A stretch of DNA of 64,000 nucleotides from Auanema rhodensis (taxonomy: Eukaryota; Animalia; Nematoda). The stretch lies in the NCBI GenBank assembly GCA_964057225.1, contig OZ059896.1:6200001-6264000 (forward strand). The letters are read 5' to 3'. The position numbers and the translations under genes were made by a program. Under the pieces are notes generated by a model, which was not told the origin of the DNA, did not search any database, and was given only the letters and a program-made list of their open reading frames with translations. Positions 45,330 to 64,000 of the stretch are shown one piece after another; positions within the stretch are counted from its first letter, which is position 1; the number at the start of each line of letters is the position of its first letter.

Positions 45330-45543
45330 AAAATGAAAATAAAGTGAATACAATTACAATTAAATTTCTGTTACGTATGTCATGCTTTTTCTTAGTTTTT
45401 CACATTTTAAAAAAAAAATTTATTTGATTAACTTGAATATTACTTGTATATAATAGAAAAAATTCAAATAAACTTTATTTATATGAAATTTTCTAATCGA
45501 ATAGTTACAAGCCATCGTTCTTAATGATATCAGCACTATATAA

Positions 45544-45645
45544 CACATGCAACAGATGGCACATTATGAGATCAGCAATCTGTTGTTATCCCTAAGCATC
45601 AGTTTTACTGGCAGCAATTGTCACATTTGCTATTTCCGATCTGTT
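45544..45645. promoter_or_regulatory. E-box cluster upstream of the Olig-family bHLH gene
   Basis: CACATG 45544, CAGATG 45553, CAATTG 45615, CATTTG 45624, and three AACAGAT/ATCTGTT copies (45551, 45578, 45639). Function is inferred. Confidence 0.4.
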
Positions 45646-46432
45646 CCAAATTGTAAAAACATTATGAAAACATGTATATACATATTATATGAATTTTTTG
45701 AAAATTAAATGACGAAATTTATTAAAAAGTTTGTTTGAAAACCAATGTTCATATTTCAAAGTGTAATAGAATTTGCTTGAGAAATTTTTGCTGAATATAA
45801 CCGAAAAATCCAGAGACATATAAATATAACATACGTAATCATAATTATTAGTATTCTGAAACGTCTGAATATGAAAATTTTTGTTAAAATTATTTACAGA
45901 ATTAAGGGGAATTTATGTATATATGTGACTGTTATCGCTTTCCTTTCCGGCCTTTGTTATTATAATCAGAAAGCTGTCTATTCATATTAGTCTTGACAAG
46001 TCATTTCTCATTCTAGCTTGTCATGAATTCTCTTTAGCATTCGTATCCTGACACCAGCCCCCAAAAGGCTTTTGGGATTACCGTACTCTTTGGAAAAGCA
46101 GAGGGCAGGCAGGCCTCCTCCTTTTCGATAGATTATCTTGCATACTTAACTATAATATCTCATTTGTGAATTCTCTTTTGATTTAATAATTTGCATTAGA
46201 ATATATTTATTAGAATTTCCATTTATTCATATCATTTGAAAATAGATTTCCGTATATACATCCTATTTTTCATTTATTATTTTAAGGAGAGAGAAATTTA
46301 TTTTTCTTTAAAATTTAAATCCTCAAATTTATTTGAGATTTTTACTACTCTTTCATGTCGAATTCCATTTTTTTTCTATGATCTCGTTTAAATTAATTAA
46401 TTAAATGTATTCCAGCTCTATTGTATATAATC

Positions 46433-46806
46433 ATGTCTAGAGATTTTGTAAACTCTGATGATGCTGGAGTTCGTTTATCAATCAACATGCGAGAAAGATG
46501 CCGTATGCATGATCTTAATGAAGCATTGGATGATTTGCGTACTGTAATTCCATATGCTCACGGCGGCTCGGTTCGTAAACTCAGCAAAATTGCTACTTTA
46601 CTCTTAGCAAAAAATCACATAATCATGCAGGTAAATAGGAATATAGATACTTCATACGGAATGTAGAAGCTACTGAATATTAAAATATTTTTTTAATAAA
46701 AAAAAAACTTTAGGCCAAAGCTATTGATGAATTACGACAAATGCTTTTGTCCTTGCAACAATCCCAACAGAGTCAAAAGAAAACTGAAAGTTCAAATGCT
46801 GAATGA
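46433..46806 (+). CDS. hlh-17: Olig/BETA3-family bHLH transcription factor (hlh-17/hlh-31/hlh-32-like), 2 exons
   Basis: [55 protein letters not shown]|AKAIDELRQ; stop TGA 46804-46806. The paralog assignment is uncertain. Confidence 0.9.
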
Positions 46807-47250
46807 TCAATTTATGATTCCAATTTTTATATTTGATTCTAGTTGATCTATGACGTGCTAAGGAACAGGGAGCAAGAAACTTACAAATTTCATGAAGCAT
46901 GATCTAACTAAAGAAGGAATATAAACAAAACTTTTTATTTAATGATAATATATTTGATATTCATATTGTTTGCACGTTCATTTAAAGATATTTTCAATTC
47001 TACTTTGGTCATTTATGGCACCGAGGACTATCACAGCAAAAAATAGAAATGTTATCGCTGAATTCTTAGTAATGGTCACAAACAAACTTCTGGATTTTTC
47101 TTATCATTCTACATTTACAATTTAATTATGTATAATATTTGTATGTCTTGCTTTTATTCTGATTTCCTTACTTTAGAGAGATTATGTGATTTATCTAGAT
47201 TCAAGTTTCATCTTAAAAATAAACTTTCCAAATAACCTTATTACTGTATA

Positions 47251-47891
47251 CAGTCCTGTGTGATGAAAGTCGGATACCCCTATGTTACAGGCCCCATATC
47301 ATATAGTTTATATTCAGTCAAAATATATGTTAATATAAATAAAACTGATTTAAATAATATTTCTAAATTTATAAGGAAAAATAGTGTTTTTTGACTATTT
47401 TGAATAATCTTTTTGATTTAACAAAATTTGAGATTAGGAAAGAAGTTAATTCATTAGAAATATTTTTAAATGATTCTGAGCACAAAGCTCGATCAATAAC
47501 TAAGTTTTTCCTATGGCATAGCTGCAAACAAGTAAGCTTCAGCATCTGAATCTTACTGAATATCTATGAATAGAACTTGGTTAACGTACAACCAAATTCT
47601 CCCGTTTAAAAGAAAAATTGACGTTTAGTGTACTCCTAACATTCTATAAAAAATTATTTCTGAAGTCTTGATGAAACTTCTGAAATTCAAGAAAGAAGAT
47701 TTCTAGCAGTTTATGAAAATTTCGGAGACTCCAGAAAATACTTTTAAACATGATTTTTTGATTCTTTTAATTTTTTCTAAATTCGTTATCATTTTTTAAC
47801 ACTCAAAATATATTTTTTCTGATTTTTTGTAGTTTGTCTGAGAAGGTATACGGGATTCTAAAAGTTGTCCGAGGTTTTTTGCACATGACTG
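47251..47891 (+). mobile_element. Decayed, internally deleted Tc1/mariner-superfamily DNA transposon
   Basis: TA on both flanks; degenerate TIRs CAGTCCTGTGTGATGAAAGTCGGA and (reverse complement) CAGTCATGTGCAAAAAACCTCGGA; transposase C-terminal relics LNLTEYL*IEL (~47546) and RRFLAVYENFGDSRKY (47694-47741). Confidence 0.72.
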
Positions 47892-48779
47892 TATACTATA
47901 TATATATATATATTATATTTTATATGTATGTGTATGTTTACATGGATAAATATAACTTGAATTTTATCGTGATTATATATCATAAAGAAAGCAGCTTTGT
48001 CAAAAAAATAACACGTTGACAATCATATGACTACTTTCTATTTCGTAGTAATATAGGTAAACCGGAAAAGGAAAAAGTTGCTTCATCAGCAACTTTTTAA
48101 AATGTTTCAAAAATAGCTCCTTGTGACTTTAATACTATATTAAGATAAACTTTAATAATCTTAATAATCGTTTTCATTATTTTTACTAGAATTGTAAAAA
48201 AATATGTTTTATCAAGAAAAATAATTATATTCACTTATCAATGAACAACCACACAAGTTTCACGGGTTTATTTAAGATGGATAGAAAAGAAGGAAGAATA
48301 ACAAATGAGACAGAGAGAAAGGTGCTAAAGGAGAAAAAGTACTGAAAGGATGATTGTTGAATCACATGAAACACATGAGTTATGGAGTAAAAACAATAGT
48401 TTCTAATAGAACAATTTATATAAGTTCATTTATATTCAACTGTAGCCACACACTACAATCAATGAAGATAAAGCTGTTTCATCAATCCCACACTATTCAT
48501 CTAAGAAAGAAAGAAAACGAAAAATAGAATAAGAGATCATCGAAAGAAAGAAAACATATGATAGAAAGCAAAGAATAAGGCAAAATGAGAGAGAACAAAG
48601 ATTTAAAAAAGAGGATTTTCAAATAAACTCCAAGTCAAATGAAGACTAAAGTTGTTTGTGTTACAGACAGTCAATAATCACTTGTGTACTTACATATTAC
48701 CTCAAATTCTCTATCTTTTGTCCCGTATAAGAAGTTTGATTGAGATGAGCTTAACGGAAAAATAAAGAAACATTACTGA

Positions 48780-48920
48780 AATACATAAGAACATAAGAGA
48801 GTACGAGAGAAAGAAGGAGAAAGAATAAGAATAAGTAATACGAGAAGAGAAAAGAAAAGGAGCGAGCAATTGGGATAAAGAGAGAACGAGAGAGAAGAAG
48901 AGAACTCGAGGAGGGATAAG
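48780..48920. repeat. Low-complexity GA-rich tract
   Basis: Degenerate gagaaagaaggagaaagaataaga... purine-rich run. Confidence 0.7.
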
Positions 48921-49873
48921 ATAGTAGATCATTAAGTGGAAGATCAAATAGTCAATATGATCTACATTAAAGAACCAGATAATGAAAAGAGCAAAATCAT
49001 ATTCATATTTGGTATCTGACTTTTTGAAAATTTAAACTACTATATAAGTCTAAAATATAAGTCCAAACAGAATGTTGGTTATATATATAATCATAAGCAT
49101 ATTTTTATTGACAAATTGATTATAAAAAAACAGAAAATAAAAATAAATAGTAAAGTATTATTATATAAGTTTGGAATTCTTAAATCTTAGCTCATCAACA
49201 ATTTTACTCAAAAATATAATAAAATGGAACTCATAGTTTTGTTCTTTAAATTTTAAATACTGATCTCAATAGTTTCACTAATGTTTATTAGAGTTAAATC
49301 TGTTTAACCTTTTTCTTGTGCTCTGTTTTTTCCCGTTTTTGAATTGTTTTATATTTTTCTTTGTGCTAGGTTAAGGAAGAAAAAGTTCCGAGATTGCAAG
49401 AAAGAATAATAGTTGGAATGGTGAAAAAAAATGTTTGTGTTGGAAGAAAAAATTGTTTGTGACTTTGAATCAAGCATAAAGTGAAAAAAAATTGTAGAGG
49501 TGTTGTTGATAAGAAAGTTAAAAGCTGAAGGATTTTTAGCAAATTGTTTGTTTATTCATTTGATTCATTTTCTATCAAACTATTGTCCAAAGTATTCAAA
49601 GTATTTCGTACTTTTTATCGAACTTGTAAGTTAGTTTTAGAAAATATTCTATAAATTATATAATACTGTTCTAAGATTTGTATTAAAACGTATTGTTTCA
49701 ATACCTAAAAACTTGATTGCATCTGTTTTCTTTTTTTTTCACATTTTTCTCTTATTTTTATCAGAAAAAATGGTTTATTGCACTCTTATCATTTTTAACT
49801 CGTAATGGCTATTTAGGTTTTTTTTATCATTTTATCTATAATAATATTTTACTTTTACAACTGTCCACTATGA

Positions 49874-49955
49874 CCTCTCACTCTCCCTCTCACTCTCTCT
49901 CTATTTCTCTCTCTCTTTCTCTCTATTTATTTTTCTCTCTTTCTCTCTCTCTATT

Positions 49956-50004
<49 letters not shown>
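49874..50004. repeat. Compound (CT)n microsatellite
   Basis: About 130 nt of interrupted ctctct runs. Confidence 0.95.
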
Positions 50005-50009
<5 letters not shown>

Positions 50010-50385
50010 CTATAATAAGATCCTGATCCTTCTTCGTAGTTATTGGGTTTCTATCATTTTTTCTAACCCTCGGATTTTCTTTCCGTTGCTATTCTTTTTA
50101 ATTTCCACATTTTTTGAACAAAATGAGGATATGCATATTAAAATGAATACAAAAATTAAAAATTGTACGAAAATAATACAAATGTAGCATTGTATACCAT
50201 TATATTATATTTAAAAGTTTTAAACTTCGTCTTATTGTAAAAAGCTTTTTAAACAAACTTATAATTAAATATCTTTTTTTACTAATAAGCCTTAATCTAC
50301 TATACATTCAAAGAAAGACTTTTAAGATCAAAATGTTAACTGGCAAACTGATTGTCAGAAGGAACAAAGTATCAACCCTGTTGTA

Positions 50386-50498
50386 TTATCTCACGTCATC
50401 GGCTTATCGTTTGGTGACAGAGGAAATATTGTGAGCACGAAAGCAACCAATCATTGATGATTGTCTGTAAAAGGGCGGAGCTTATACTTATTATAAAA
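50386..50498 (+). promoter_or_regulatory. Putative Pol II promoter module (GATA, CRE-like, CCAAT, GC box, TATA) upstream of glutamine synthetase
   Basis: TTATC 50386 and 50404, TCACGTCA 50391, CCAAT 50447, GGGCGGAG 50473, TATAAAA 50492, in canonical order. Confidence 0.5.
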
Positions 50499-52676
50499 TG
50501 GTATGATTCTTACGATCTGCAATTTACTAAGTCATTTATATCTAATTCTTGAGCTTCAATCATCTTTGTTCCAATCTGATATGTATTTTTTCTGTATTAT
50601 TATCGGCATAACCTTCATCAACAATATTATGAAAATATTTATCAATTCATAATCTTTGCAATATTAAATAACTTCAAATTGCCGTTGTTACTACTGTACT
50701 CTATAAGTTCAATATGCGGACACTTGACAACGTGATATTCACATGATTTCAATTATTTATTTCAAAGATGTTTGGAACAGTTGCATTTCATTTGCCATGT
50801 TTTCTTTTCCTTTATTTACATTTTTATTCTTTATTTGTTATGCTAAACTTTCTCTTCTTTTCTAATAGAATAATTTTCAATCCAGTTATCTTCACTAGAA
50901 CTATTTTGGAATTCGAGCTAAGAGATATTTCTCAAATAAAAAATAAAATATCTATATATATATATCTATATATATATTAAATTATGTATATGATACTTTG
51001 TGAAACAGTTCAAGAATCCAAAATTCATTTGATCATATACTATCACGTGGATATCAATCAATCTTAAGGATCATCTTTCTTGATATTATATATTTCTCAA
51101 ATTAGTTGTTCTCTTGTTCTTGTATCTTGTTAGAATATTCCATAATTGAAATATATTCTTTAAGAATTCCTAAAAAAAACTTTTTTTCTTTCTTATAATT
51201 AAACTTCTGCTTGTAAAATATTGTTTAGTATCTTTCTCACATTCTTATCTAATCAATGAATGCTATAATCTATGCATTTATTCACGTGTACAAGTCATAG
51301 AATCTTTGTTTTTGTTTGAGAACAAAGTATTATAATTATTAATTATTATTAATCTTATTTGGATTATAACGAAAAATCAGCAAAACAATGACCGTTTTGC
51401 AATTGTTGTTTGTATGCAAAAATATACAAACAAACCAATTCCAACTAGTTTTTTAATTTCTTTACACAGTAACAGCAGTAATAGCTCACACTTTAAAAAA
51501 TAACAAACTATTCGGAACTATAAATACCAAATAGTTAAAATGATAGTAAATTTTATTTTACTAGCTTTTTCGCTGTAGCTGATAAGTTCTTTTTTGCCAT
51601 TCGTTCCCTATTATTTCGAGACGATTAATCCATAATATGTTACATAATCGTTCTTTGATTTGATAATTTATCTAATAGTATAATTTGGCCGAAATTATCT
51701 TTGTGCTTAACTGATCATTGAACTATTGTCAGAGGCTTTGTACCGATTATACCAGAAGAAAGAGAAACCATTATTTTTTATGTATATAAGAATCCACTAT
51801 AGTTAACAATCCTTATTCAAACGAATAATGTTGATATAGTACTTTTCTCTTTGTTTTTAAATTTATTAACTTTTTACAAATAGTTTCTCTTTTGCCATTT
51901 ATTTGGAATGAATTATCAAATTCTTCTCTGACAAGAATAGATCAACACAGGCGGAGTACTATAGAACAAAGTACAGATTTTGATACTAATTCTAAGCCAT
52001 TTTGTTTGAAAAGTAATATTGTTCCGATATTAGGTCTCACAAATATATTTCACTTCTATATCAGGGCATCTCGTCTGTTATAAAGAAGTATGTTTTACTT
52101 TAATTATTTTATATTGTTGTGCACTATTTCTTTACTTTATTGTTTTATGTTATGCTCTTCCTATCTTTTGTACAACTGTCTTTCTCAATATTTTTATGAG
52201 AATTTTGTTGTTTTGTTATGTGTTCACTCAATAGTGATAGCTTCAATTTCTTGGCGGCAATCAGTTACTTAATCCCACATTTTGATAACATGGAACCCTG
52301 ATCAGCACATTTTTGGTTTCAACCTCCGCATGACTGCTTTCTTATCTCTGTATTCCAGTTTAATACATAAGCATCAAAAAATTTGACTTTCAACTGTTGT
52401 TAAAACGACCGAAGGTGTTTTGTAATTCACATGTGGCTAATGTGACCCAGCTCAGTTTTTTTCCGAACATTGTCCCTTTTTTTCTGTAGTTTGGACGTTT
52501 TTTGTGTTGGATGGTTGTTTATGTCCAATTTGAGACAAACACATTTCTATACGGATTACTTTTTGATTTTCTGTTCTCTAGTGATATCTCGAATTTCTAT
52601 ACATTAACATCATTGTTTGAATAGTTTCTGATCTATATTTTTGGATTTTTGGATTTTTGAATTCTTCATTTCAGTG

Positions 52677-54567
52677 ATGGCTCAGAATCTTCGTAGTCAG
52701 TTTGCTACTGACAAGGCAATTACTGCTAAATTCATGGAGCTCGACCAACGTGGCAAAGTTCAAGTTGTTTATATGTGGATTGATGGAAGTGGTGAAAACA
52801 TCCGTGCTAAGAGCAGAACCATTGACTTTGAGCCAAAGTCTCCTGAAGGTCAGTTCGTTTTTAGAGAAAAGATCTCAAAATTTTAGAATGAGAGTAAAAA
52901 TAGTTTAATGTCCTATAAACACAAATGAATATTCTTTGAAAGAATGCGATAGGGGTCATTTGTAAGTGGACTTAATAATGAGTTTACTAGATAAATGATT
53001 TTTTGATAAGAAATATTAGTTCAAAATAATCTTGTCTATTTGTTCTGAAATAAAATTTTTTCAGAACTTCCTATTTGGAATTTCGATGGTTCTTCTACTG
53101 GGCAAGCAGATGGTCCAGACTCTGATGTTTATCTGAAGCCGGTAGCCATATACCCTGATCCATTTAGACGTGGGGCCAACAAACTTGTGCTCTGCGAAAC
53201 TTTGGATAACAAGAAGCAACCAACTGGTAAGTATAAGAGATGATCATATGATTTTGAGCATTTAAACTGGGATGGGTGATTACAATTGCTGTAATAGGGG
53301 TCAGTAAAAATACTATGAAAGCTGTTAGATCAGTTTTGTAGATAAGCGATTTGATTATTTTATCGTGGCAGGGGAAAAAAAGGTTTAAAAGTCAAAAACA
53401 AATAACAAGAAACTTCTCGTTACTGTCTAATCCTCCACGAACTTTTGAATCCTTTTCGTAGTCTAATTGTTTAAATAGATTATTTTTAATCTTTTTGCAG
53501 CTCATTTGCTGTTTTATTGAAAAAAAAAGAAACTTCACTGATTTCAGCTACCAACCATAGATCTCGATGTGCGGAAATTATGTCGAAGCATTCCGACCAA
53601 AAGCCATGGTTCGGTATGGAGCAAGAATACACCCTTTTGGATTGTGACGGACATCCATTTGGATGGCCAAAGAATGGATTCCCTGGACCACAAGGTGAAA
53701 CCTTATATATCCATAAGAGATATTGGAAGTTTCTTATAAAATTTTAACTTTTGCATTTAAGGACCATATTATTGTGGAGTAGGATCAAATAAAGTGTATG
53801 GTCGAGATATTGTTGAGGCTCACTATCGTGCTTGCCTTTATGCTGGAATTCAAATCTCTGGCACCAACGCTGAAGTTATGCCAGCTCAATGGGAATTTCA
53901 AGTAGGACCATGTGAAGGAATTTCTATGGGTGATCAACTTTGGGTTGCTCGCTACCTTCTTCAAAGAGTTGCTGAGGAATATGGAGTTGTAGCTTCTCTT
54001 GACTGCAAGCCAATTAAGGGTAAATATAAAATATATTTGGATAGAATATATTCTATACGATAGGAGACTGGAATGGAGCCGGATGTCATACTAACTTCTC
54101 AACTGAAAAGATGCGTACTACAGGTGGAATAAATGAAATTATGGATGCTATCAACAAACTTAGTCTTGTTCATCGTCAGCACATCGCTTACTACGATCCC
54201 CATGGTGGAAAAGTAATTTATCTTTTTTAAAATTCAGTTACTGATCACTTATTAGGATAATGAGCGTCGTTTAACTGGTCTCCATGAAACTGCTAAGATT
54301 GACCAATTCTCATATGGTGTTGCATCTCGTGCTAGTTCTATTAGAATCCCTCGTTCAACCGAAGAGGATGGATATGTAAGAAGAAAATTAGAAACTTTTG
54401 TTTTAATTTTGTTATTTCAGGGATATTTCGAAGATCGTCGTCCTTCATCCAACTGCGATCCATACACTGTTTGTGCAGCCCTTGTACGCACATGTTGTGG
54501 TGATAATGCTGATCGCAAGTTGTCGATGATGTATGTTCCAAGTGCTGGCTCATTCCCCAGTCAATAA
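52677..54567 (+). CDS. GLUL: Glutamine synthetase (GS II); likely gln-3-type
   Basis: TTTCAG acceptor before ATG; [89 protein letters not shown]; stop TAA 54565-54567. Confidence 0.97.
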
Positions 54568-58800: not shown

Positions 58801-59139
58801 ATCACATGTATGCTAGAGTTTGAGCTCTAAAATATTAAGAGAACCTTATCCTGTATTATATATCGTTCAGATATTTTCAAATAACAATCAATCGATCAAT
58901 GTTAAAAGCACCAGATTCAAATGGAATTATGAATTATATAAAAAATTTAAACAAATTCGATGATGACAATATATTGGAGGGTCTATGTACAATTAAAAAA
59001 ATGGAAAATGAAAACGATCATGAATGATTTATGAACAACTTGAAGGAATGAAACCATCCGTTTCAATTCGATATGTTTCTTGTGATGTAGTGTCATGTCA
59101 TGTTTGACATACGTAACATTTTTTAGATAAGCTAGCATC

Positions 59140-60671
59140 TTACAACCTTGTTGATTGTTCTCGACGCATTTCTTCAATATTAACATAAGCTGGCTCATCA
59201 AAAGGATCCTTTGTTGTATGAAAAACATCAGAAACAATCATACTATCACTAGTACCATATGGATCGATATCCTAAAAAACATTCTTTAAAATATAAAAAT
59301 TTGTTTCACAAGCCTCGAGTGATTTCGGAAGTGGTGGAACATATTCTAAAGGTGGCGCAGAAGCTATACCAACATCAACACCTCTTGTTTGTAGCTCTTT
59401 ATTCAAATAATATCTGGAATTAATAAGAAATAAAATAAATTATATGATACAATTAGACATACTGATATTGGTTATATCTCTGTTTTATTTGCCATGAATA
59501 TTGCTGTTCTTCTAAAGTCAAGATTCGCAAGAAGTTTTCTAATTCCGGAACTTCAAAAGCATCCCACTGAAAAATAATGAGATACGAATATTGCGATTTA
59601 AAAATAATTAAAACTAAATAATTAAATATATGTTTCACAACCTACCATGATATCACCAGTATCATTTTCTTGTAATACTAAAATATTACCACACTTAACA
59701 CTTGGCCAATTCAAGACAACTTTAAGAGGACAAACATCATCAGCTATTTTAATCATTTTTCCTATAAAATATTTAAATGAAAGAAGTATGTGTTGTGTGT
59801 TCAATGCCATAAAAGAAAATATACAATTTTAATTTGTATAATGTTGTTTTCTAGTAATTCTTTTCTTTTCCCGAGAATTTTACACATAGTAAAGTCAAGA
59901 TGTTGCCAATCAAGTTCATCAAGATGCCAGACACTTAAGAGCTCTTGAAAATAATTTCATATCCATATAAGCTGGACTTCTGATTAGGTCTGGGTGAAAG
60001 TCAAATATTCATTCAACTAACTTTTCTATTTCTTTTTTTTAATTGTTTTCTCGTTTTCTTCTAAAGAAAAACGTATTTGAATTCGGGAAAAGAGAAAGTT
60101 TTCATCCAAAGTATTATGAAAAAAATAAAATGAAACTTACGCATTAATGTTTCTTCATCTGCAGCATATGAACACTCATATAAAGCAAATTTTCTTGGGT
60201 TATCAGCTACTCGAAACTTTCGAAGAAGAGTTACAATCATTTGTCTTAAAACCGAGTAAATAGATGAAAACATATTAATTAAAGGAATATACCTTGTCGT
60301 CATTGTACTATTGATATTTATTGTTTTCACTGTATTTCTTGGCAAAAAGAAAGATGTTATAGTCCGTTGCTTCATTGTATTTGTGGAATTTACTGCAAAA
60401 AAAGACTTCAATTCTAACTGATTGGTAAAATCATTTTTGGATCAGAATACTTTCAAGATATTCATGAAAAGCAGAATATTATAAAATAAAACGATTAACC
60501 ATTAGTATATATGCAGTTGAGTACTAATGGATATCTTTTAACCGAGAAATATTTATGTACTTCTCGATTCATTTACATTCATATCTTAGTGTCTTCCTCA
60601 TTCTTCATCATCATGCTTTTCACGTATAGATAATTGAAAAATCTTCCCTCAACCTTAGCTATGTATTATAT

Positions 60672-60725
<54 letters not shown>

Positions 60726-63692
60726 CTTTTTCTTTCTTTAATTATAGACCTTCTCCTTATTCATCCTTGCTCAATACCTTTCAACATACTCCTTTCAACT
60801 TTGCGGTTTTCTAACAGCTCTTACTGATGGAGCTATGATTGAGTGGTATTGCTTCAGTTAATAAAGCCTAACAATGACATGTTTCTCTTATATTCACGAT
60901 CTAATGTCACTTAAATTGAAGGCAAGACGCATCATGTGCTTCTCTAACGCTTACTACTTATTGAATATCCTGTCTTCATTTATATTCGTCTGATTTATTT
61001 ATTCATCGTAAACTGCAGCTCTCCTTACTATTCAATAGCCTTTGGAAAATTTTTATTTTACTTACAACCAGTAACTCAGCTTCATTGTTTATTAAGGATG
61101 ATGTTAAGATTTATATTTTTAATTTTTAAAAATTAGTTTGATCAAGTAGTACTCTGATCTTTTCTTATATATTCATACTTACATACATATATATTATACA
61201 TATTTCTTCTATAAGTTCATAAAGTATCTTATGAACACATTTAATTTTATTTATTTTTAGTATCATTTTTCCAAATAAAAAAAACATTGAACGAATCATT
61301 ATAAACTTTCAGGAAATGGAACAAAAACCAAACTTTGGAATTGTTTTGCAAAATGTATTTGAAGAAGTTTCATATTTTAATTATATTGAACAGTAGAAAA
61401 AAATACTATATTTTAGGGAGAAAAATGGCCAAGTAAAAATATTGAAATAATTTCTCAGAATGATAATAATCAGGTATTTCAATAAATAGTTTGATAAAAA
61501 GAATATTTATATATAAACAGACTGAGAATATAACTGAAATAGCTAAACTGATTTCAACTCATATATCTGATATTTTAATTCAAAGACTTAATTTACAAGA
61601 AGACAATACTGTTCAACAGGCTCATACATCTTATAATTCTCATTCAAATCATAGAAAACGTATGTTTGTCTTATTGGTAATCTCTCAAGAGAATTTCAGC
61701 ACGGACTTCATCGTGTGACTCAAGAAGATCTTTGATGTCATCTCCTAAGCCTCCATCACACATCATTACAGAGGTTTTCAATTAGGTTTTCAACATTCAC
61801 TTATTTCAAATTCCAGAATACTTCGAAATTTCACAGTGAAAATCGTCTTAGTCGTACTGCTCGACCAACACCTACACCATTAGAAAATCGAGCTTTTCAA
61901 TTAAGACGGAAAAGCTTAGAGAGCAGAAAAGGTAATCAAAGTATATTTTTTGTTTTTTTTTGTCTTATTTTGATTTATCTCATTTTCAGTTCAATATACT
62001 AAACCATTGAACTCAAAACGATGTACTATTGAAGAATTACTATAATAATAATATCAAATAATACAAATAAGTTTAAATATTAATTGTAATTTTGAATTAC
62101 CTGTATTCCTAATATCATACACCGTAGGAGGATTCTCGCCAGCTACGATACTTATGGGCCGAGTGAAGTTCATATGAATCTGTATATGTCCAGAAAAGAA
62201 ATTTCCATCCGGACTCTGTGAAATAATATTCCTTCTGAATTTCATTTGGTTTCTATGAACCTACCAAAATCATTTGAAGTCCTTCCTCACTATTTAGATT
62301 ATATTCTGTAACTTTTCTTGCTAAATCATCTTCTTCATATTGTGCAGTCCATTCGCATGGCGTATCTTCTTTAACAAATAACTCATGAACTCTTAGTGTC
62401 TGTAATTGAAAGTATAAATAAATTTCAAATAATCATTGTAAACGATCACATAAAGTTAATCTAAACTCACTTTACCACTGGGAGCTTGTAATGTTACAAG
62501 ATTTTCCAACTTTCTGCTCGTAGCTGACGGTGCAAAAGATTTAGGAAGCGTCATGGACCCTGATTTTGGTAAAGCCAACGATGATTCCTGAAAGATATAT
62601 TTATAGTATACACAAAATGTGTTCAAAACAAAAAAAATGAAATAATATTTCGAAGTTTAAATCCTACTTCAGCTACGGTATTGCCATTTTCTTTGTCTGT
62701 ATCTAGCTTTGGAGATAAAGTATGACTAGCCAACATTTCTTTTAACTCTTTTGGAATTGTCCCTAAAGTCCCATCATTCAATTTTGGATACAAAGATTGA
62801 AATTCTCCTAAAGACATATAAAGAATTCCGATACTATAATTAAATAATGTTACCTGATGTTAGTGATGATCCAGCTGATCTACAATCTAAAGTTACAAGT
62901 TCTTGACAACGTTGATGACAAGTATAGTTACATTCTAAATATTAAATTTTGAATGGAAAGTTTAAGAAAAGTTTTTTACTTTCACACTTCACCGCTTGTC
63001 TTAGAATTCCCCATATGAAATCTCCGCACTTATCGCACCACGTTGGATGTAATAAGTTAATACATCTGAAAAAAATTATTTTGATGCAATGAAAGTTTTG
63101 AAAGTTCGGTAGCACTTACTGAAAGCTATGACCTTGTCCTTGATGTGCTTCTCCTGCTAATACAAGATCGTTCAAAGGTCCGAAATGCTGACGCTCCAAA
63201 GTGTCTGAAAACTGATGCGATGAGTCCAAATCAGCGAGCAAACAAGTGTTCCAATCCCAAGACTGAAGAAAGAAAGATATAGACAGATAATTTATCCAAA
63301 AAATATGTAAAAAAATTTAATTTAATGTACTTGATTACTGAAATAGTCTAAAGTGATTCTTTGAAAATGAAAAAAACTTGCATCATATTCCATAGCAGGC
63401 GTTTGAATTATATCGTCTAGCTTGATACTATTATAAGATATAACATCATCCAGCATATCATCATGATTTGAACTAATATTAGGTGTAGTGTGATTAACTA
63501 ATGATTTACCAAGCTGAAAATTCAATACTTGTACTGAACATTCAAATAGAACACAAATAATTCATGAATACTTGAAAAGAAAAACGAACCATGGCTGAAT
63601 TGGATTGATCCAGGTTTCCAATTCCTAACTGGCTCATCCACTCACTGATTCCAGTCAGCTGGGAGAGTTTTGCTCGAATACCAGAAAACCAG
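59140..63692 (-). CDS. rsf-1: Ras-association domain family protein RASSF (C1 + RA + SARAH); 5' end uncertain, possibly outside the window
   Basis: C1 domain GHSF..HPTWCDKCGDFIWGILRQAVKC..CNYTCHQRC; RA domain FSGHIQIHMNFTRPISI, TSFFLPRNTVKTININS, LLRKFRVADNPRKFALYE; SARAH LVLQENDTGDIMWDAFEVPELENFLRILTLEEQ; ends EQSTRL*. Confidence 0.93.
60676..60722. repeat. (CT)n microsatellite in RASSF intron
   Basis: Uninterrupted run of about 22 CT units. Confidence 0.95.
61316..62045 (+). CDS. Nested antisense gene in a RASSF intron; hypothetical 159-aa hydrophilic protein, 6 exons
   Basis: TTTCAG|GAA ATG; exons 61316-61354, 61417-61473, 61521-61659, 61700-61773, 61817-61931, 61990-62045; all five GT-AG introns (40-62 nt) are phase-compatible with no stops: MEQKPNFGIVLQNGEKWPSK...EIAKLISTHISDILIQRLNL...PLENRAFQLRRKSLESRKVQYTKPLNSKRCTIEELL*. 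Confidence 0.8.
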
Positions 63693-64000
63693 CTAAAAAT
63701 AAAGAAAAACAGTAAAGGAAAAAATTTTAAACTATAACCGAATCAGAATAGATTTTTTATAATTTTATAAAAAAAATTTATTTTATTAAATGAAATACCA
63801 ATAAAGAATATTCTATTAAATTTTTAAAATTGTATACTTTGAATAGAAAAAAACGAAAATTTATATATTTACGGTTGAAACGTCTAATATGAAAGATTAC
63901 ATATATCAGATCTTTCGTTAAATAATGTTTTAAAAACTAAACAAAACTAATAATTAAACATTAATATAATAACTTATCAGTGATATATTTAATTACTAAC

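What the first reader, a model, noticed from the sequence alone, without database searches (positions are those of the whole stretch)
61316..62045. Six-exon gene hidden antisense inside the RASSF (rsf-1) RA-domain intron
Seen: the 1.7-kb RASSF intron (60393-62100) holds a plus-strand gene with a TTTCAG acceptor before the ATG and five consecutive phase-matched short introns, giving a 159-aa protein. The ORF track shows only one piece. Its stop is ~55 nt from the RASSF donor at 62100, so its 3' UTR probably overlaps the RASSF exon in antisense. The protein has a helix-like segment (EIAKLISTHISDILIQRL), Ser/Arg-rich kinase-type sites (RTSS, RRSL, RRKS) and a basic ENRAFQLRR motif; I do not recognise the family. 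Inference: a possibly lineage-specific gene able to interfere with, or form dsRNA against, its host.
Basis: partly seen in the sequence, partly recalled or inferred. Interest (0 to 1): 0.8.

Follow-up and report, generated by a model that had tools for sequence, protein, structure and literature searches.

The report
Conserved small gene inside RASSF intron
A real six-exon gene for a small, mostly unstructured protein lies backwards inside an intron of the RASSF signalling gene; it has kept that position in many related roundworms, but its relatives are already catalogued as unnamed proteins and its function is still unknown.

Summary
Exons 61316-61354, 61417-61473, 61521-61659, 61700-61773, 61817-61931 and 61990-62045 (+) join in frame through five GT-AG introns of 40-62 nt to give 159 aa. 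They lie inside intron 60393-62100 of a minus-strand C1+RA+SARAH (RASSF) gene.

The ORF chain alone is weak evidence: 3 of 100 shuffles do as well. Conservation decides it.
- Orthologues lie antisense in the same RASSF intron in Auanema sp. JU1783, two Pristionchus species, Cylicocyclus, Ancylostoma, Trichostrongylus and an unnamed Logan sample.
- Three intron positions and phases are shared.
- dN/dS against Auanema is about 0.07.
- A Heligmosomoides-like orthologue exists as a spliced, polyadenylated mRNA contig.

The product belongs to a nematode family with no Pfam model, seen here only in rhabditine (clade V) worms. All members are annotated "hypothetical", including C. elegans K11H3.2, which lies outside rsf-1. 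The family has an N-terminal Trp helix, a central amphipathic helix, a Ser/Arg/Pro linker and a C-terminal FHSENRL...TPLENRAxxLRR helix. This genome holds two further paralogues.

The gene is therefore not specific to this species. Host interference or dsRNA is untested, though the short 3' gap (55 nt here, about 5 nt in one species) makes antisense overlap plausible.

The joined protein was never searched; all searches were exon by exon. The scan found other conserved nested genes in this genome before.

The parts
61307..61312 (+). TTTCAG acceptor-like site 3 nt upstream of the start codon (possible SL trans-splice site)
   Evidence: Sequence read directly. Function is inferred, with no RNA data.
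61316..61354 (+). Exon 1 (39 nt, MEQKPNFGIVLQN), ending at a phase-0 intron
   Evidence: The phase-0 intron just before the ..W.. exon is shared with paralogues L004 and L005 and with the Pristionchus and Cylicocyclus orthologues. MEQKPNF resembles the MEQSPNF start of the Caenorhabditis members.
61417..61473 (+). Exon 2 (57 nt, GEKWPSK...NDNNQ), carrying the conserved Trp
   Evidence: It aligns with ANEWA, ASKWA, ADEWA and ANLWA in relatives and is followed by a phase-0 intron, as in the orthologues.
61521..61659 (+). Exon 3 (139 nt), the central conserved amphipathic helix ITEIAKLISTHISDILIQRL
   Evidence: 63% identical over 30 aa to the syntenic Auanema exon, E 1e-9. It is a conserved block across 17 orthologues. 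AF2 gives pLDDT 93-97 for the homologous helix.
61700..61773 (+). Exon 4 (74 nt, phase 1), Ser/Arg/Pro linker with RTSS and RRSLMSSP
   Evidence: An R-x-S-L-x-x-S-P-like element recurs in relatives. The homologous region is predicted disordered.
61817..61931 (+). Exon 5 (115 nt), C-terminal motif KFHSENRL...TPLENRAFQLRRKSLESRK
   Evidence: 83% identical to the syntenic Auanema exon, E 5e-17. Two paralogue hits in the own genome. Profile hits E 2e-12. hhalign to the Caenorhabditis group gives 98% probability.
61990..62045 (+). Exon 6 (56 nt including stop TAA at 62043-62045)
   Evidence: A phase-1 intron lies at a comparable place, 8-12 residues after the LRR motif, in L004 and Cylicocyclus. 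This is the least conserved exon.
62046..62100 (+). 55-nt gap between the nested stop and the host exon; it holds only variant poly(A) signals
   Evidence: AATAAT three times, AATACA, AATAAG, and no AATAAA. The next AATAAA on the + strand is at 62417.
60393..62100 (-). Host RASSF intron (1708 nt) that contains the whole nested gene
   Evidence: Splice sites read. The flanking exons match RASSF orthologues.
62101..62245 (-). Host RASSF exon 5' of the intron, faced by the nested gene's 3' end (the end at 62245 is an ORF limit, not a mapped splice site)
   Evidence: 71-81% identical to the homologous exon in seven other species, always next to the nested gene's 3' end.
60141..60392 (-). Host RASSF exon 3' of the intron, the start of the RA domain
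   Evidence: Pfam RA, E 2.7e-6. Splice sites read.
62945..63115 (-). Host C1 (phorbol-ester/DAG-type zinc finger) exon region (ORF limits, not splice sites)
   Evidence: Pfam C1_1, E 2e-6.
59463..59566 (-). Host SARAH-like exon (WDAFEVPELENFLRILTLEEQQY...)
   Evidence: It is 67-86% identical to the matching exon of orthologous RASSF genes whose products carry Nore1-SARAH.

Best explanation
This is an ordinary, functional protein-coding gene nested antisense in the RASSF (rsf-1-type) intron between the C1 and RA exons. Shown: it was inherited in that position from the common ancestor of diplogastrid, strongylid and Auanema-like rhabditine nematodes. It encodes a 159-aa member of a nematode protein family seen here only in rhabditine (clade V) worms and without a Pfam model. 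That family includes C. elegans K11H3.2 and P. pacificus PRIPAC_76815, all annotated 'hypothetical'. Shown or predicted: the protein has a short Trp-containing N-terminal helix, a strongly conserved central amphipathic helix, a disordered Ser/Arg/Pro-rich linker, and a conserved basic C-terminal helix (FHSENRL...TPLENRAxxLRR). Inferred: it acts as a small, phosphorylation-regulated docking or adaptor protein. Its helices would bind partners. Its LRR-x-S/T-hydrophobic tail (RRKSL here, RRASI in hookworms, RRMK-L/I in Caenorhabditis) would be a substrate or pseudosubstrate site for a basophilic AGC-type kinase. Inferred: the nesting is kept mainly because any rearrangement separating the pair would break the host gene, not because the two genes need each other.
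For: Gene model: six in-frame exons and five canonical short introns. Purifying selection: pN 0.18 against pS 0.73, dN/dS about 0.07 versus Auanema on the two alignable exons; at DNA level only those two exons align between the two species' introns. Family: profile of the motif exon gives Auanema CAI4221344.1 at E 2e-12, plus Pristionchus and Trichostrongylus. The wider profile gives four Pristionchus species and about ten strongylid genera at E 1e-18 to 1e-47. The Caenorhabditis group, including K11H3.2, is linked by reciprocal hits and by hhalign at 98%, E 1e-13. Same intron, same orientation: in seven other loci the order is always RA exon(-), helix exon(+), motif exon(+), the exon homologous to 62101-62245(-), C1 exon(-) where those parts lie on the contig. 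Gene structure: the phase-0 introns before the Trp exon, before the helix exon and before the motif exon are shared with orthologues and with paralogue L004. Expression of an orthologue: a 901-nt Logan contig carries an intronless CDS, AATAAA and a poly(A) tail. Architecture: AF2 predicts helix, disordered region, helix, with pLDDT 93-97 on the central helix and pTM 0.2-0.3. Of the 25 columns invariant among 17 orthologues, 21 are kept here and the other four carry conservative changes (C to T, Q to E, V to I, R to K). Opposite nested pairs are common: 567 in C. elegans (PMC12274878).
Against: There is no RNA evidence for this species, so the start, the last small exon and the 3' end are models. 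The N-terminal third is poorly conserved here: the SLD..FSEL motif of relatives is missing and the protein is shorter than most orthologues (159 aa against 200-300). The functional reading rests only on sequence patterns. The phospho-acceptor after LRR is not invariant (RRANA and RRAIA in trichostrongylids, RRMK in Caenorhabditis). There is no Pfam, PDB or Atlas relative. No paper mentions K11H3.2. Passive retention of the nesting is an argument from general principle and was not tested.
Confidence: 0.85

Rival explanations
1. The nested gene matters mainly as a cis-regulator of its host. Either its transcription or its 3' UTR overlaps the RASSF exon at 62101-62245 in antisense and modulates the C1-containing RASSF isoform (interference or dsRNA). 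Or its promoter drives a short RASSF isoform, as reported for ceh-10 and polq-1.
For: Its 3' end always faces the same host exon. The gap is only 55 nt here without a canonical AATAAA, about 75 nt in Auanema and about 5 nt in Logan contig L022. The pairing has been kept across three major rhabditine lineages. Nested genes can induce short host transcripts in C. elegans (PMC12274878).
Against: The protein itself is under strong purifying selection, so it is not merely a transcript. The gap is 170-1070 nt in Pristionchus and the strongylids, and the orthologous mRNA contig has a 3' UTR of only about 60 nt, so overlap is not conserved. In Caenorhabditis the only family member found lies outside rsf-1, and rsf-1 is absent from the list of 567 opposite nested pairs, yet both genes persist. 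There are no expression data.
Confidence: 0.1
2. The copy in this genome is a decaying duplicate: an expressed or silent pseudogene of the family, whose function is carried by the two paralogues.
For: Its N-terminal part has diverged and is shortened compared with orthologues. Two paralogues exist at C4:16.67 Mb and C7:15.29 Mb.
Against: The reading frame is intact across six exons and all ten splice sites are canonical. Of 25 family-invariant residues, 21 are kept. dN/dS is about 0.07 against Auanema. It is the copy in the ancestral position.
Confidence: 0.04
3. It is a chance chain of open segments in an AT-rich intron and not a gene.
For: Comparable spliced ORFs arise in 3 of 100 shuffles and in 33 of 158 window tiles under bare GT-AG rules.
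Against: Exon peptides hit the syntenic intron of other genera at E 5e-17 and 1e-9. Intron phases are conserved. Relatives are annotated in more than 15 species. An orthologous mRNA exists.
Confidence: 0.01

Closest known systems
Auanema sp. JU1783 CAI4221344.1 (P0001, 'unnamed protein product', 154 aa)
   Same: Orthologue. It lies antisense in the same RASSF intron. The motif exon is 83% identical and the helix exon 63% identical. The introns before the helix exon and before the motif exon have the same phases.
   Different: Its annotated N-terminus and C-terminus look like read-through of introns: it lacks the first exon and the small last exon modelled here. The linker is not alignable.
Pristionchus pacificus PRIPAC_76815 (P0006) and strongylid hypothetical proteins, e.g. 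Necator RB195_002658 (P0010) and Cylicocyclus nassatus P0009
   Same: Same family and, where context was available (P. pacificus, P. fissidentatus, Cylicocyclus, A. caninum, T. colubriformis), the same nested position and orientation. They share CLEQLARAISAHVTDILIERL-type and RYHSENRL...ETPLENRASRLRR blocks.
   Different: They are longer (200-300 aa) and have a clear SLD..FSEL..A..WA N-terminal motif that is degenerate here. Their genes are larger, with introns over 1 kb. The gap to the host exon is 170-1070 nt.
C. elegans K11H3.2 (NP_499186.1, P0031) and its Caenorhabditis orthologues
   Same: Same family by reciprocal profile hits and hhalign (98%, E 1e-13) over the ETPLENRASRLRR helix. They share an ..AEEWA.. 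N-terminal motif, an MEQSPNF start like MEQKPNF here, and RRxS-rich linkers.
   Different: The C. briggsae copy lies among mrpl-36, mitochondrial-carrier and gpdh genes, not in rsf-1. They lack the YHSENRL half of the motif. The C. elegans model itself lacks the C-terminal motif. Which of this genome's three paralogues is their orthologue is unresolved.
Opposite nested gene pairs of nematodes (e.g. ceh-10 in polq-1, nos-2 in him-14, F37A4.6 in isw-1)
   Same: A protein-coding gene lies wholly inside an intron of a host gene on the other strand and is kept there over long evolutionary distances (PMC12274878).
   Different: This pair is not in the C. elegans list of 567, so it is a pair the model worm does not have.
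Basophilic-kinase substrate or pseudosubstrate peptides (Kemptide LRRASLG; PKI pseudosubstrate), recalled from memory
   Same: The C-terminal helix ends in LRR-x-S-hydrophobic (RRKSL here, RRASI in hookworms), or in non-phosphorylatable variants (RRMKL). This resembles a PKA/AGC consensus or pseudosubstrate.
   Different: There is no sequence family relationship: Pfam gives nothing. The acceptor Ser is not invariant. This is a resemblance in how it might work, not membership, and it is untested.

Membership tests
K11H3.2 / PRIPAC_76815-like nematode protein family (no Pfam model) | C-terminal block [FY]HSENRL...(E)TPLENRA[SF]xLRR | tested here: met
   Exon 5 carries KFHSENRL...TPLENRAFQLRR. 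Profile hits at E 2e-12. The T-P-L-E-N-R-A and L-R-R columns are invariant in 17 orthologues. hhalign gives 98%.
K11H3.2 / PRIPAC_76815-like nematode protein family (no Pfam model) | Central amphipathic helix ..IS.H[VI][ST][DE][IL]L[IM].RL | tested here: met
   Exon 3 reads IAKLISTHISDILIQRL, against LARAISAHVTDILIERL in relatives. tblastn to the syntenic exons gives E 1e-9 to 2e-3.
K11H3.2 / PRIPAC_76815-like nematode protein family (no Pfam model) | N-terminal SLD..F[ST]EL...A..WA motif split by a phase-0 intron before A..WA | tested here: inconclusive
   The intron position, its phase and the Trp are kept (..IVLQN|GEKWP). The SLD..FSEL part is not recognisable here.
K11H3.2 / PRIPAC_76815-like nematode protein family (no Pfam model) | Orthologue position: antisense in the RASSF intron between the exon homologous to 62101-62245 and the first RA exon | tested here: met
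   The same order and strands are seen in seven other loci. The Caenorhabditis members fail this feature.
Opposite nested (intronic antisense) protein-coding gene | The whole CDS lies inside one host intron on the opposite strand | tested here: met
   CDS 61316-62045 (+) lies inside intron 60393-62100 (-).
Cis-natural antisense pair with exon overlap | Mature transcripts of the two genes overlap in exonic sequence | not testable with these tools
   Only a 55-nt gap and the lack of a canonical AATAAA are known. No RNA data exist for this species.
AKAP (RII-binding amphipathic helix) | Helix fitting the RII-binding consensus, or the Pfam RII_binding_1 model | tested here: not met
   No Pfam family at E up to 1 for three family members. 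By hand, the hydrophobic register fits, but Ser/Thr occupy core positions and no register satisfies the published consensus as I recall it. That consensus comes from memory, so this is a lead only.
PKI (cAMP-dependent protein kinase inhibitor) | Sequence membership in the PKI family | tested here: not met
   No Pfam hit. No PDB sequence relative at E up to 10.

The most novel reading that the evidence does not exclude
The nested gene has stayed in the RASSF intron since the rhabditine ancestor because the two genes are functionally coupled. Either the nested gene's promoter or antisense 3' end controls which RASSF isoform is made (with or without the C1 domain). Or the small phosphoprotein acts in the same RASSF/Hippo-type pathway, so that co-location secures co-regulation.
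Probability: 0.1. Interest if true: 0.55.

Novelty: new member of a known kind. Interest (0 to 1): 0.3.

Why it matters
The result adds one correctly modelled gene to this genome. It also ties together a scattered set of "hypothetical proteins" (K11H3.2, PRIPAC_76815 and many strongylid parasite entries) into one family with three sharply conserved helices and a defined gene structure.

It shows that the pairing with RASSF is ancestral for diplogastrids, strongylids and Auanema-like worms but is absent in Caenorhabditis. That gives a natural comparison for asking whether nested and host genes influence each other.

The family has been seen only in nematodes and is present in major animal and human parasites, so its function would be of practical interest. 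Nothing here points to a new kind of mechanism.

Tried and rejected
1. Pfam scans of the exon peptides and of three family members found nothing.
2. A PDB sequence search with the family profile found nothing at E up to 10.
3. An ESM Atlas look-up of the Necator member gave no usable hit.
4. Rfam on 59000-64000 found nothing at E up to 1, and no tRNAs were found in the window.
5. The word search with the Auanema protein alone found only itself; the profile was needed.
6. A literature search for K11H3.2 found no papers.
7. I tested microsynteny between the C. briggsae K11H3.2-type locus and the two paralogue regions of this genome. There were no shared ORFs within +/-10 kb. Only loose linkage of L005 to gpdh (0.33 Mb) and mrpl-36 (0.8 Mb) was seen, so orthology is left open.
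8. A full gene model of paralogue L005 failed: my middle exons do not stay in frame. Only its first two exons and its last exon are trusted.
9. A 'strict splice site' chance control rejected the true model itself, because one real acceptor is purine-rich. It was replaced by the loose control.
10. The AKAP-helix and LIR-motif readings were considered by eye and dropped. Core positions are polar, and W-x-x-[LIV] is not conserved.
11. A LATS-type HxKxxT site in exon 3/4 is not conserved in Auanema.
12. Fold search was not run. The models are isolated helices with pTM 0.2-0.3, and matches for such models are meaningless.
13. Look-ups of the Necator, Nippostrongylus and C. elegans proteins returned no contig.
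14. A window-wide AATAAA scan was uninformative. The tail was checked by script instead.
15. Left out by rule: any search, exact look-up or fold of the joined 159-aa model, which has no reference. All searches used single exons by reference or database proteins.
Full report
**What is there**

The window is G000:C4:6200001-6264000 of a 181-Mb, 32% GC nematode genome.
- The exons are 61316-61354, 61417-61473, 61521-61659, 61700-61773, 61817-61931 and 61990-62045 on the plus strand.
- They join in frame to 480 nt, giving 159 aa plus a stop.
- The five GT-AG introns are 62, 47, 40, 43 and 58 nt.
- TTTCAG sits three bases before the ATG, and the stop is at 62043-62045.
- The mechanical ORF list shows only one 75-aa piece.

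The host on the minus strand is a RASSF1/5-type gene. It has a C1 domain (Pfam E 2e-6), an RA domain (E 2.7e-6) and a SARAH-like exon. Its intron 60393-62100 holds the whole model. The intron ends just before the RA domain starts rather than inside it. The nested stop is 55 nt from the host exon at 62101.

**Is it more than chance?**

Taken alone, barely. I allowed bare GT-AG introns of 40-65 nt, at most five of them. Under those rules a spliced ORF of at least 480 nt appears in 3 of 100 dinucleotide shuffles of the region and in 33 of 158 tiles of the window. A stricter splice-site control rejected the true model itself and was discarded. The case therefore rests on conservation.

**How the searches were run**

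The joined 159-aa model was never sent to any search, look-up or folding tool; that step is left out.

Exon-sized queries are blind in the word search, because it only considers candidates of 0.55-1.75 times the query length. Pfam had left the exons open. I therefore used the one large profile search, with an alignment of the motif exon and its two in-genome paralogue hits.

**Conservation**

*Paralogues in this genome.* The exon-5 peptide finds two paralogues, at C4:16.667 Mb (L004) and C7:15.291 Mb (L005). Both are 56% identical, at E about 1e-6.
- L004 gives a clean seven-exon, 178-aa model. The intron before its ..W.. exon and the intron before its motif exon are phase 0, and the intron after its motif exon is phase 1, as in the window gene.
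- L005 could only be modelled for its first two exons and its last exon.

*The family.* The profile search of 1.84 billion representatives returned three proteins, all from nematodes:
- Auanema sp. JU1783 CAI4221344.1, at E 2e-12;
- a Pristionchus fissidentatus protein;
- a Trichostrongylus fragment.

A wider profile recovered four Pristionchus species and about ten strongylid genera at E 1e-18 to 1e-47, plus weak Caenorhabditis hits. A Caenorhabditis profile then recovered C. elegans K11H3.2. It also hit Haemonchus and Pristionchus members reciprocally, at E 2e-8 to 3e-5. hhalign between the two groups gives 98% probability, E 1e-13, but over the C-terminal 41 columns only. Every member is called "hypothetical", "unnamed" or "uncharacterized", apart from one UniRef label of "Transposase" that looks spurious. 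None has a Pfam domain. No paper in the library mentions K11H3.2.

*Same intron, same orientation.* I checked the genomic context of the family members with the look-up of encoding contigs.
- In Auanema, P. fissidentatus, P. pacificus and Cylicocyclus nassatus the gene lies antisense inside a gene whose product carries C1 and SARAH (and RA in all but the truncated P. pacificus record).
- In Ancylostoma caninum it lies between split RASSF fragments.

I then mapped the window's own exon peptides onto those loci, and onto a Trichostrongylus contig and a Logan contig. The order is always the same where the parts lie on the contig: RA exon (-), helix exon (+), motif exon (+), the exon homologous to 62101-62245 (-), C1 exon (-). 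It is therefore the same intron and the same orientation in eight species counting this one, and the nested 3' end always faces the same host exon.

*Gene structure.* Three intron positions are shared with the annotated orthologues, all phase 0: before the Trp exon, before the helix exon and before the motif exon.

*Selection.*
- Against Auanema, the helix and motif exons give pN 0.18, pS 0.73 and dN/dS about 0.07.
- At DNA level only those two exons align between the two introns.
- Of the 25 columns invariant in 17 orthologues, the window protein keeps 21. The other four carry conservative changes.

*Expression of an orthologue.* A 901-nt Logan contig (SRR15275159) is identical, over the part they share, to the Heligmosomoides polygyrus entry. 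It carries the whole CDS without introns, an AATAAA and a poly(A) tail. At least one orthologue is therefore made as a spliced mRNA. There is no RNA evidence for this species.

**Caenorhabditis differs**

- The C. briggsae member lies among mrpl-36, a mitochondrial carrier and gpdh, not in rsf-1.
- Neither rsf-1 nor any T24F1 gene (T24F1.3 is rsf-1 as I recall it) is among the 567 opposite nested pairs of C. elegans WS290 (PMC12274878 Table S1).
- Pristionchus is the outgroup to strongylids, Auanema and Caenorhabditis (established phylogeny, from my own knowledge). The nested state is therefore ancestral, and Caenorhabditis lost or moved it.
- Which of the three paralogues here corresponds to K11H3.2 is unresolved. 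L005 lies on the same contig as gpdh (0.33 Mb away) and mrpl-36 (0.8 Mb away), but there is no microsynteny within +/-10 kb.

**The protein**

AlphaFold2 models of the Auanema and Necator members, each run with a family alignment, predict no compact fold (pTM 0.29 and 0.21). They predict:
- an N-terminal helix over the SLD..FSEL..A..WA motif;
- a central helix with pLDDT 93-97;
- about 100 disordered residues;
- a C-terminal helix beginning at PLENRA, with pLDDT 72-81.

The linker carries a recurring R-x-S-L-x-x-S-P-type element and several RRxS sites. The tail reads LRR-K-S-L here, LRR-A-S-I in hookworms, LRR-M-S-I in Pristionchus and LRR-M-K-L/I in Caenorhabditis. From memory, this resembles a PKA/AGC substrate such as Kemptide, or a pseudosubstrate.

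My reading is a small, phosphorylation-regulated docking protein. That is inference only. The AKAP-helix, LIR and LATS-site readings did not survive inspection.

- The 55-nt gap has no AATAAA, only variant signals. The next AATAAA on the + strand lies beyond the host exon.
- The gap is about 75 nt in Auanema and about 5 nt in Logan contig L022. Antisense overlap with the host exon is therefore likely in some species.
- It is 170-250 nt in Pristionchus and Cylicocyclus, and about 1 kb in Ancylostoma and Trichostrongylus. The orthologous mRNA has a UTR of only about 60 nt. Overlap is thus not a conserved property.
- Nothing tested here shows interference with the host.

**Verdict**

The gene is real, conserved and correctly delimited. 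It is a new member of a known kind: an opposite nested gene belonging to an already annotated but uncharacterised nematode family. It is not species-specific. The nesting is probably retained passively, because a breakpoint between the two genes would destroy the host.

Earlier notes of this scan on other pieces of the same genome reported similar conserved nested genes (nos-2 in him-14, F37A4.6 in isw-1) and called the genome Auanema-like. My closest hit is also Auanema.

Noticed in passing
window 60676-60725: A (CT)n microsatellite of about 25 units lies in the host intron, roughly 600 nt upstream of the nested gene's start. Similar (CT)n/(GA)n runs flank paralogue L005.
   Followed up: no
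L004:828-1702 (= G000:C4:16666124-16666998, +): A paralogue with a clean seven-exon, 178-aa model (MNNSSNTDLDKNFNETINQ|ANEWA... EVSRFHPENRL...MENNAFRLR...). The introns around its Trp and motif exons have the same phases as in the nested gene. The nearest Pfam signal is a weak ABC2_membrane exon about 3 kb upstream.
   Followed up: partly
L005:1450-2244 (= G000:C7, about 15.291 Mb, minus strand): A second paralogue (MHYSYDSVDLEEVFNETIND|ASKWADD... MQKTRFHSENRLLRTAGPFKLPLENRAYRLRL...). Its middle exons could not be put in frame. A nematode FAR (fatty-acid/retinoid-binding) gene lies 3-4 kb away, at L015:6349-7492.
   Followed up: partly
P0031 (C. elegans K11H3.2, NP_499186.1): The C. elegans model ends in ...TINTLLPPTEVPQCFKTESFDTITSSWRNAIGESSE. 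It lacks the ETPLENRASRLRRMK tail that most other Caenorhabditis members recovered carry (C. japonica P0032 also lacks it). The database model may miss or misplace its last exon. The locus could not be fetched.
   Followed up: partly
L010:10001-10648 (Auanema sp. JU1783 CAI4221344.1): The annotated first exon (MTQKVILRLISNKKTILFKVDTWSS...) and the tail (...EARKGSVNLI) look like read-through of intron sequence. The true first exon and a small last exon are probably missing from that model.
   Followed up: partly
L022:247-498 (Logan SRR13325286, unnamed nematode): The nested orthologue's stop codon lies about 5 nt from the antisense RASSF exon. Its 3' UTR must therefore overlap that exon if the gene is expressed.
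   Followed up: partly
P0007 (Haemonchus placei) and P0019 (Heligmosomoides polygyrus): P0007 carries the RYHSENRL...RLRRAT block twice in tandem, which is probably an assembly or annotation artefact. UniRef labels P0019 'Transposase', which is almost certainly a spurious name.
   Followed up: no
window 45330-54567 and L010:3805-5521: A glutamine synthetase gene lies a few kb from RASSF in Auanema. According to another first-stage note, the same is true in this window. Local gene order around RASSF therefore appears to be shared with Auanema.
   Followed up: no
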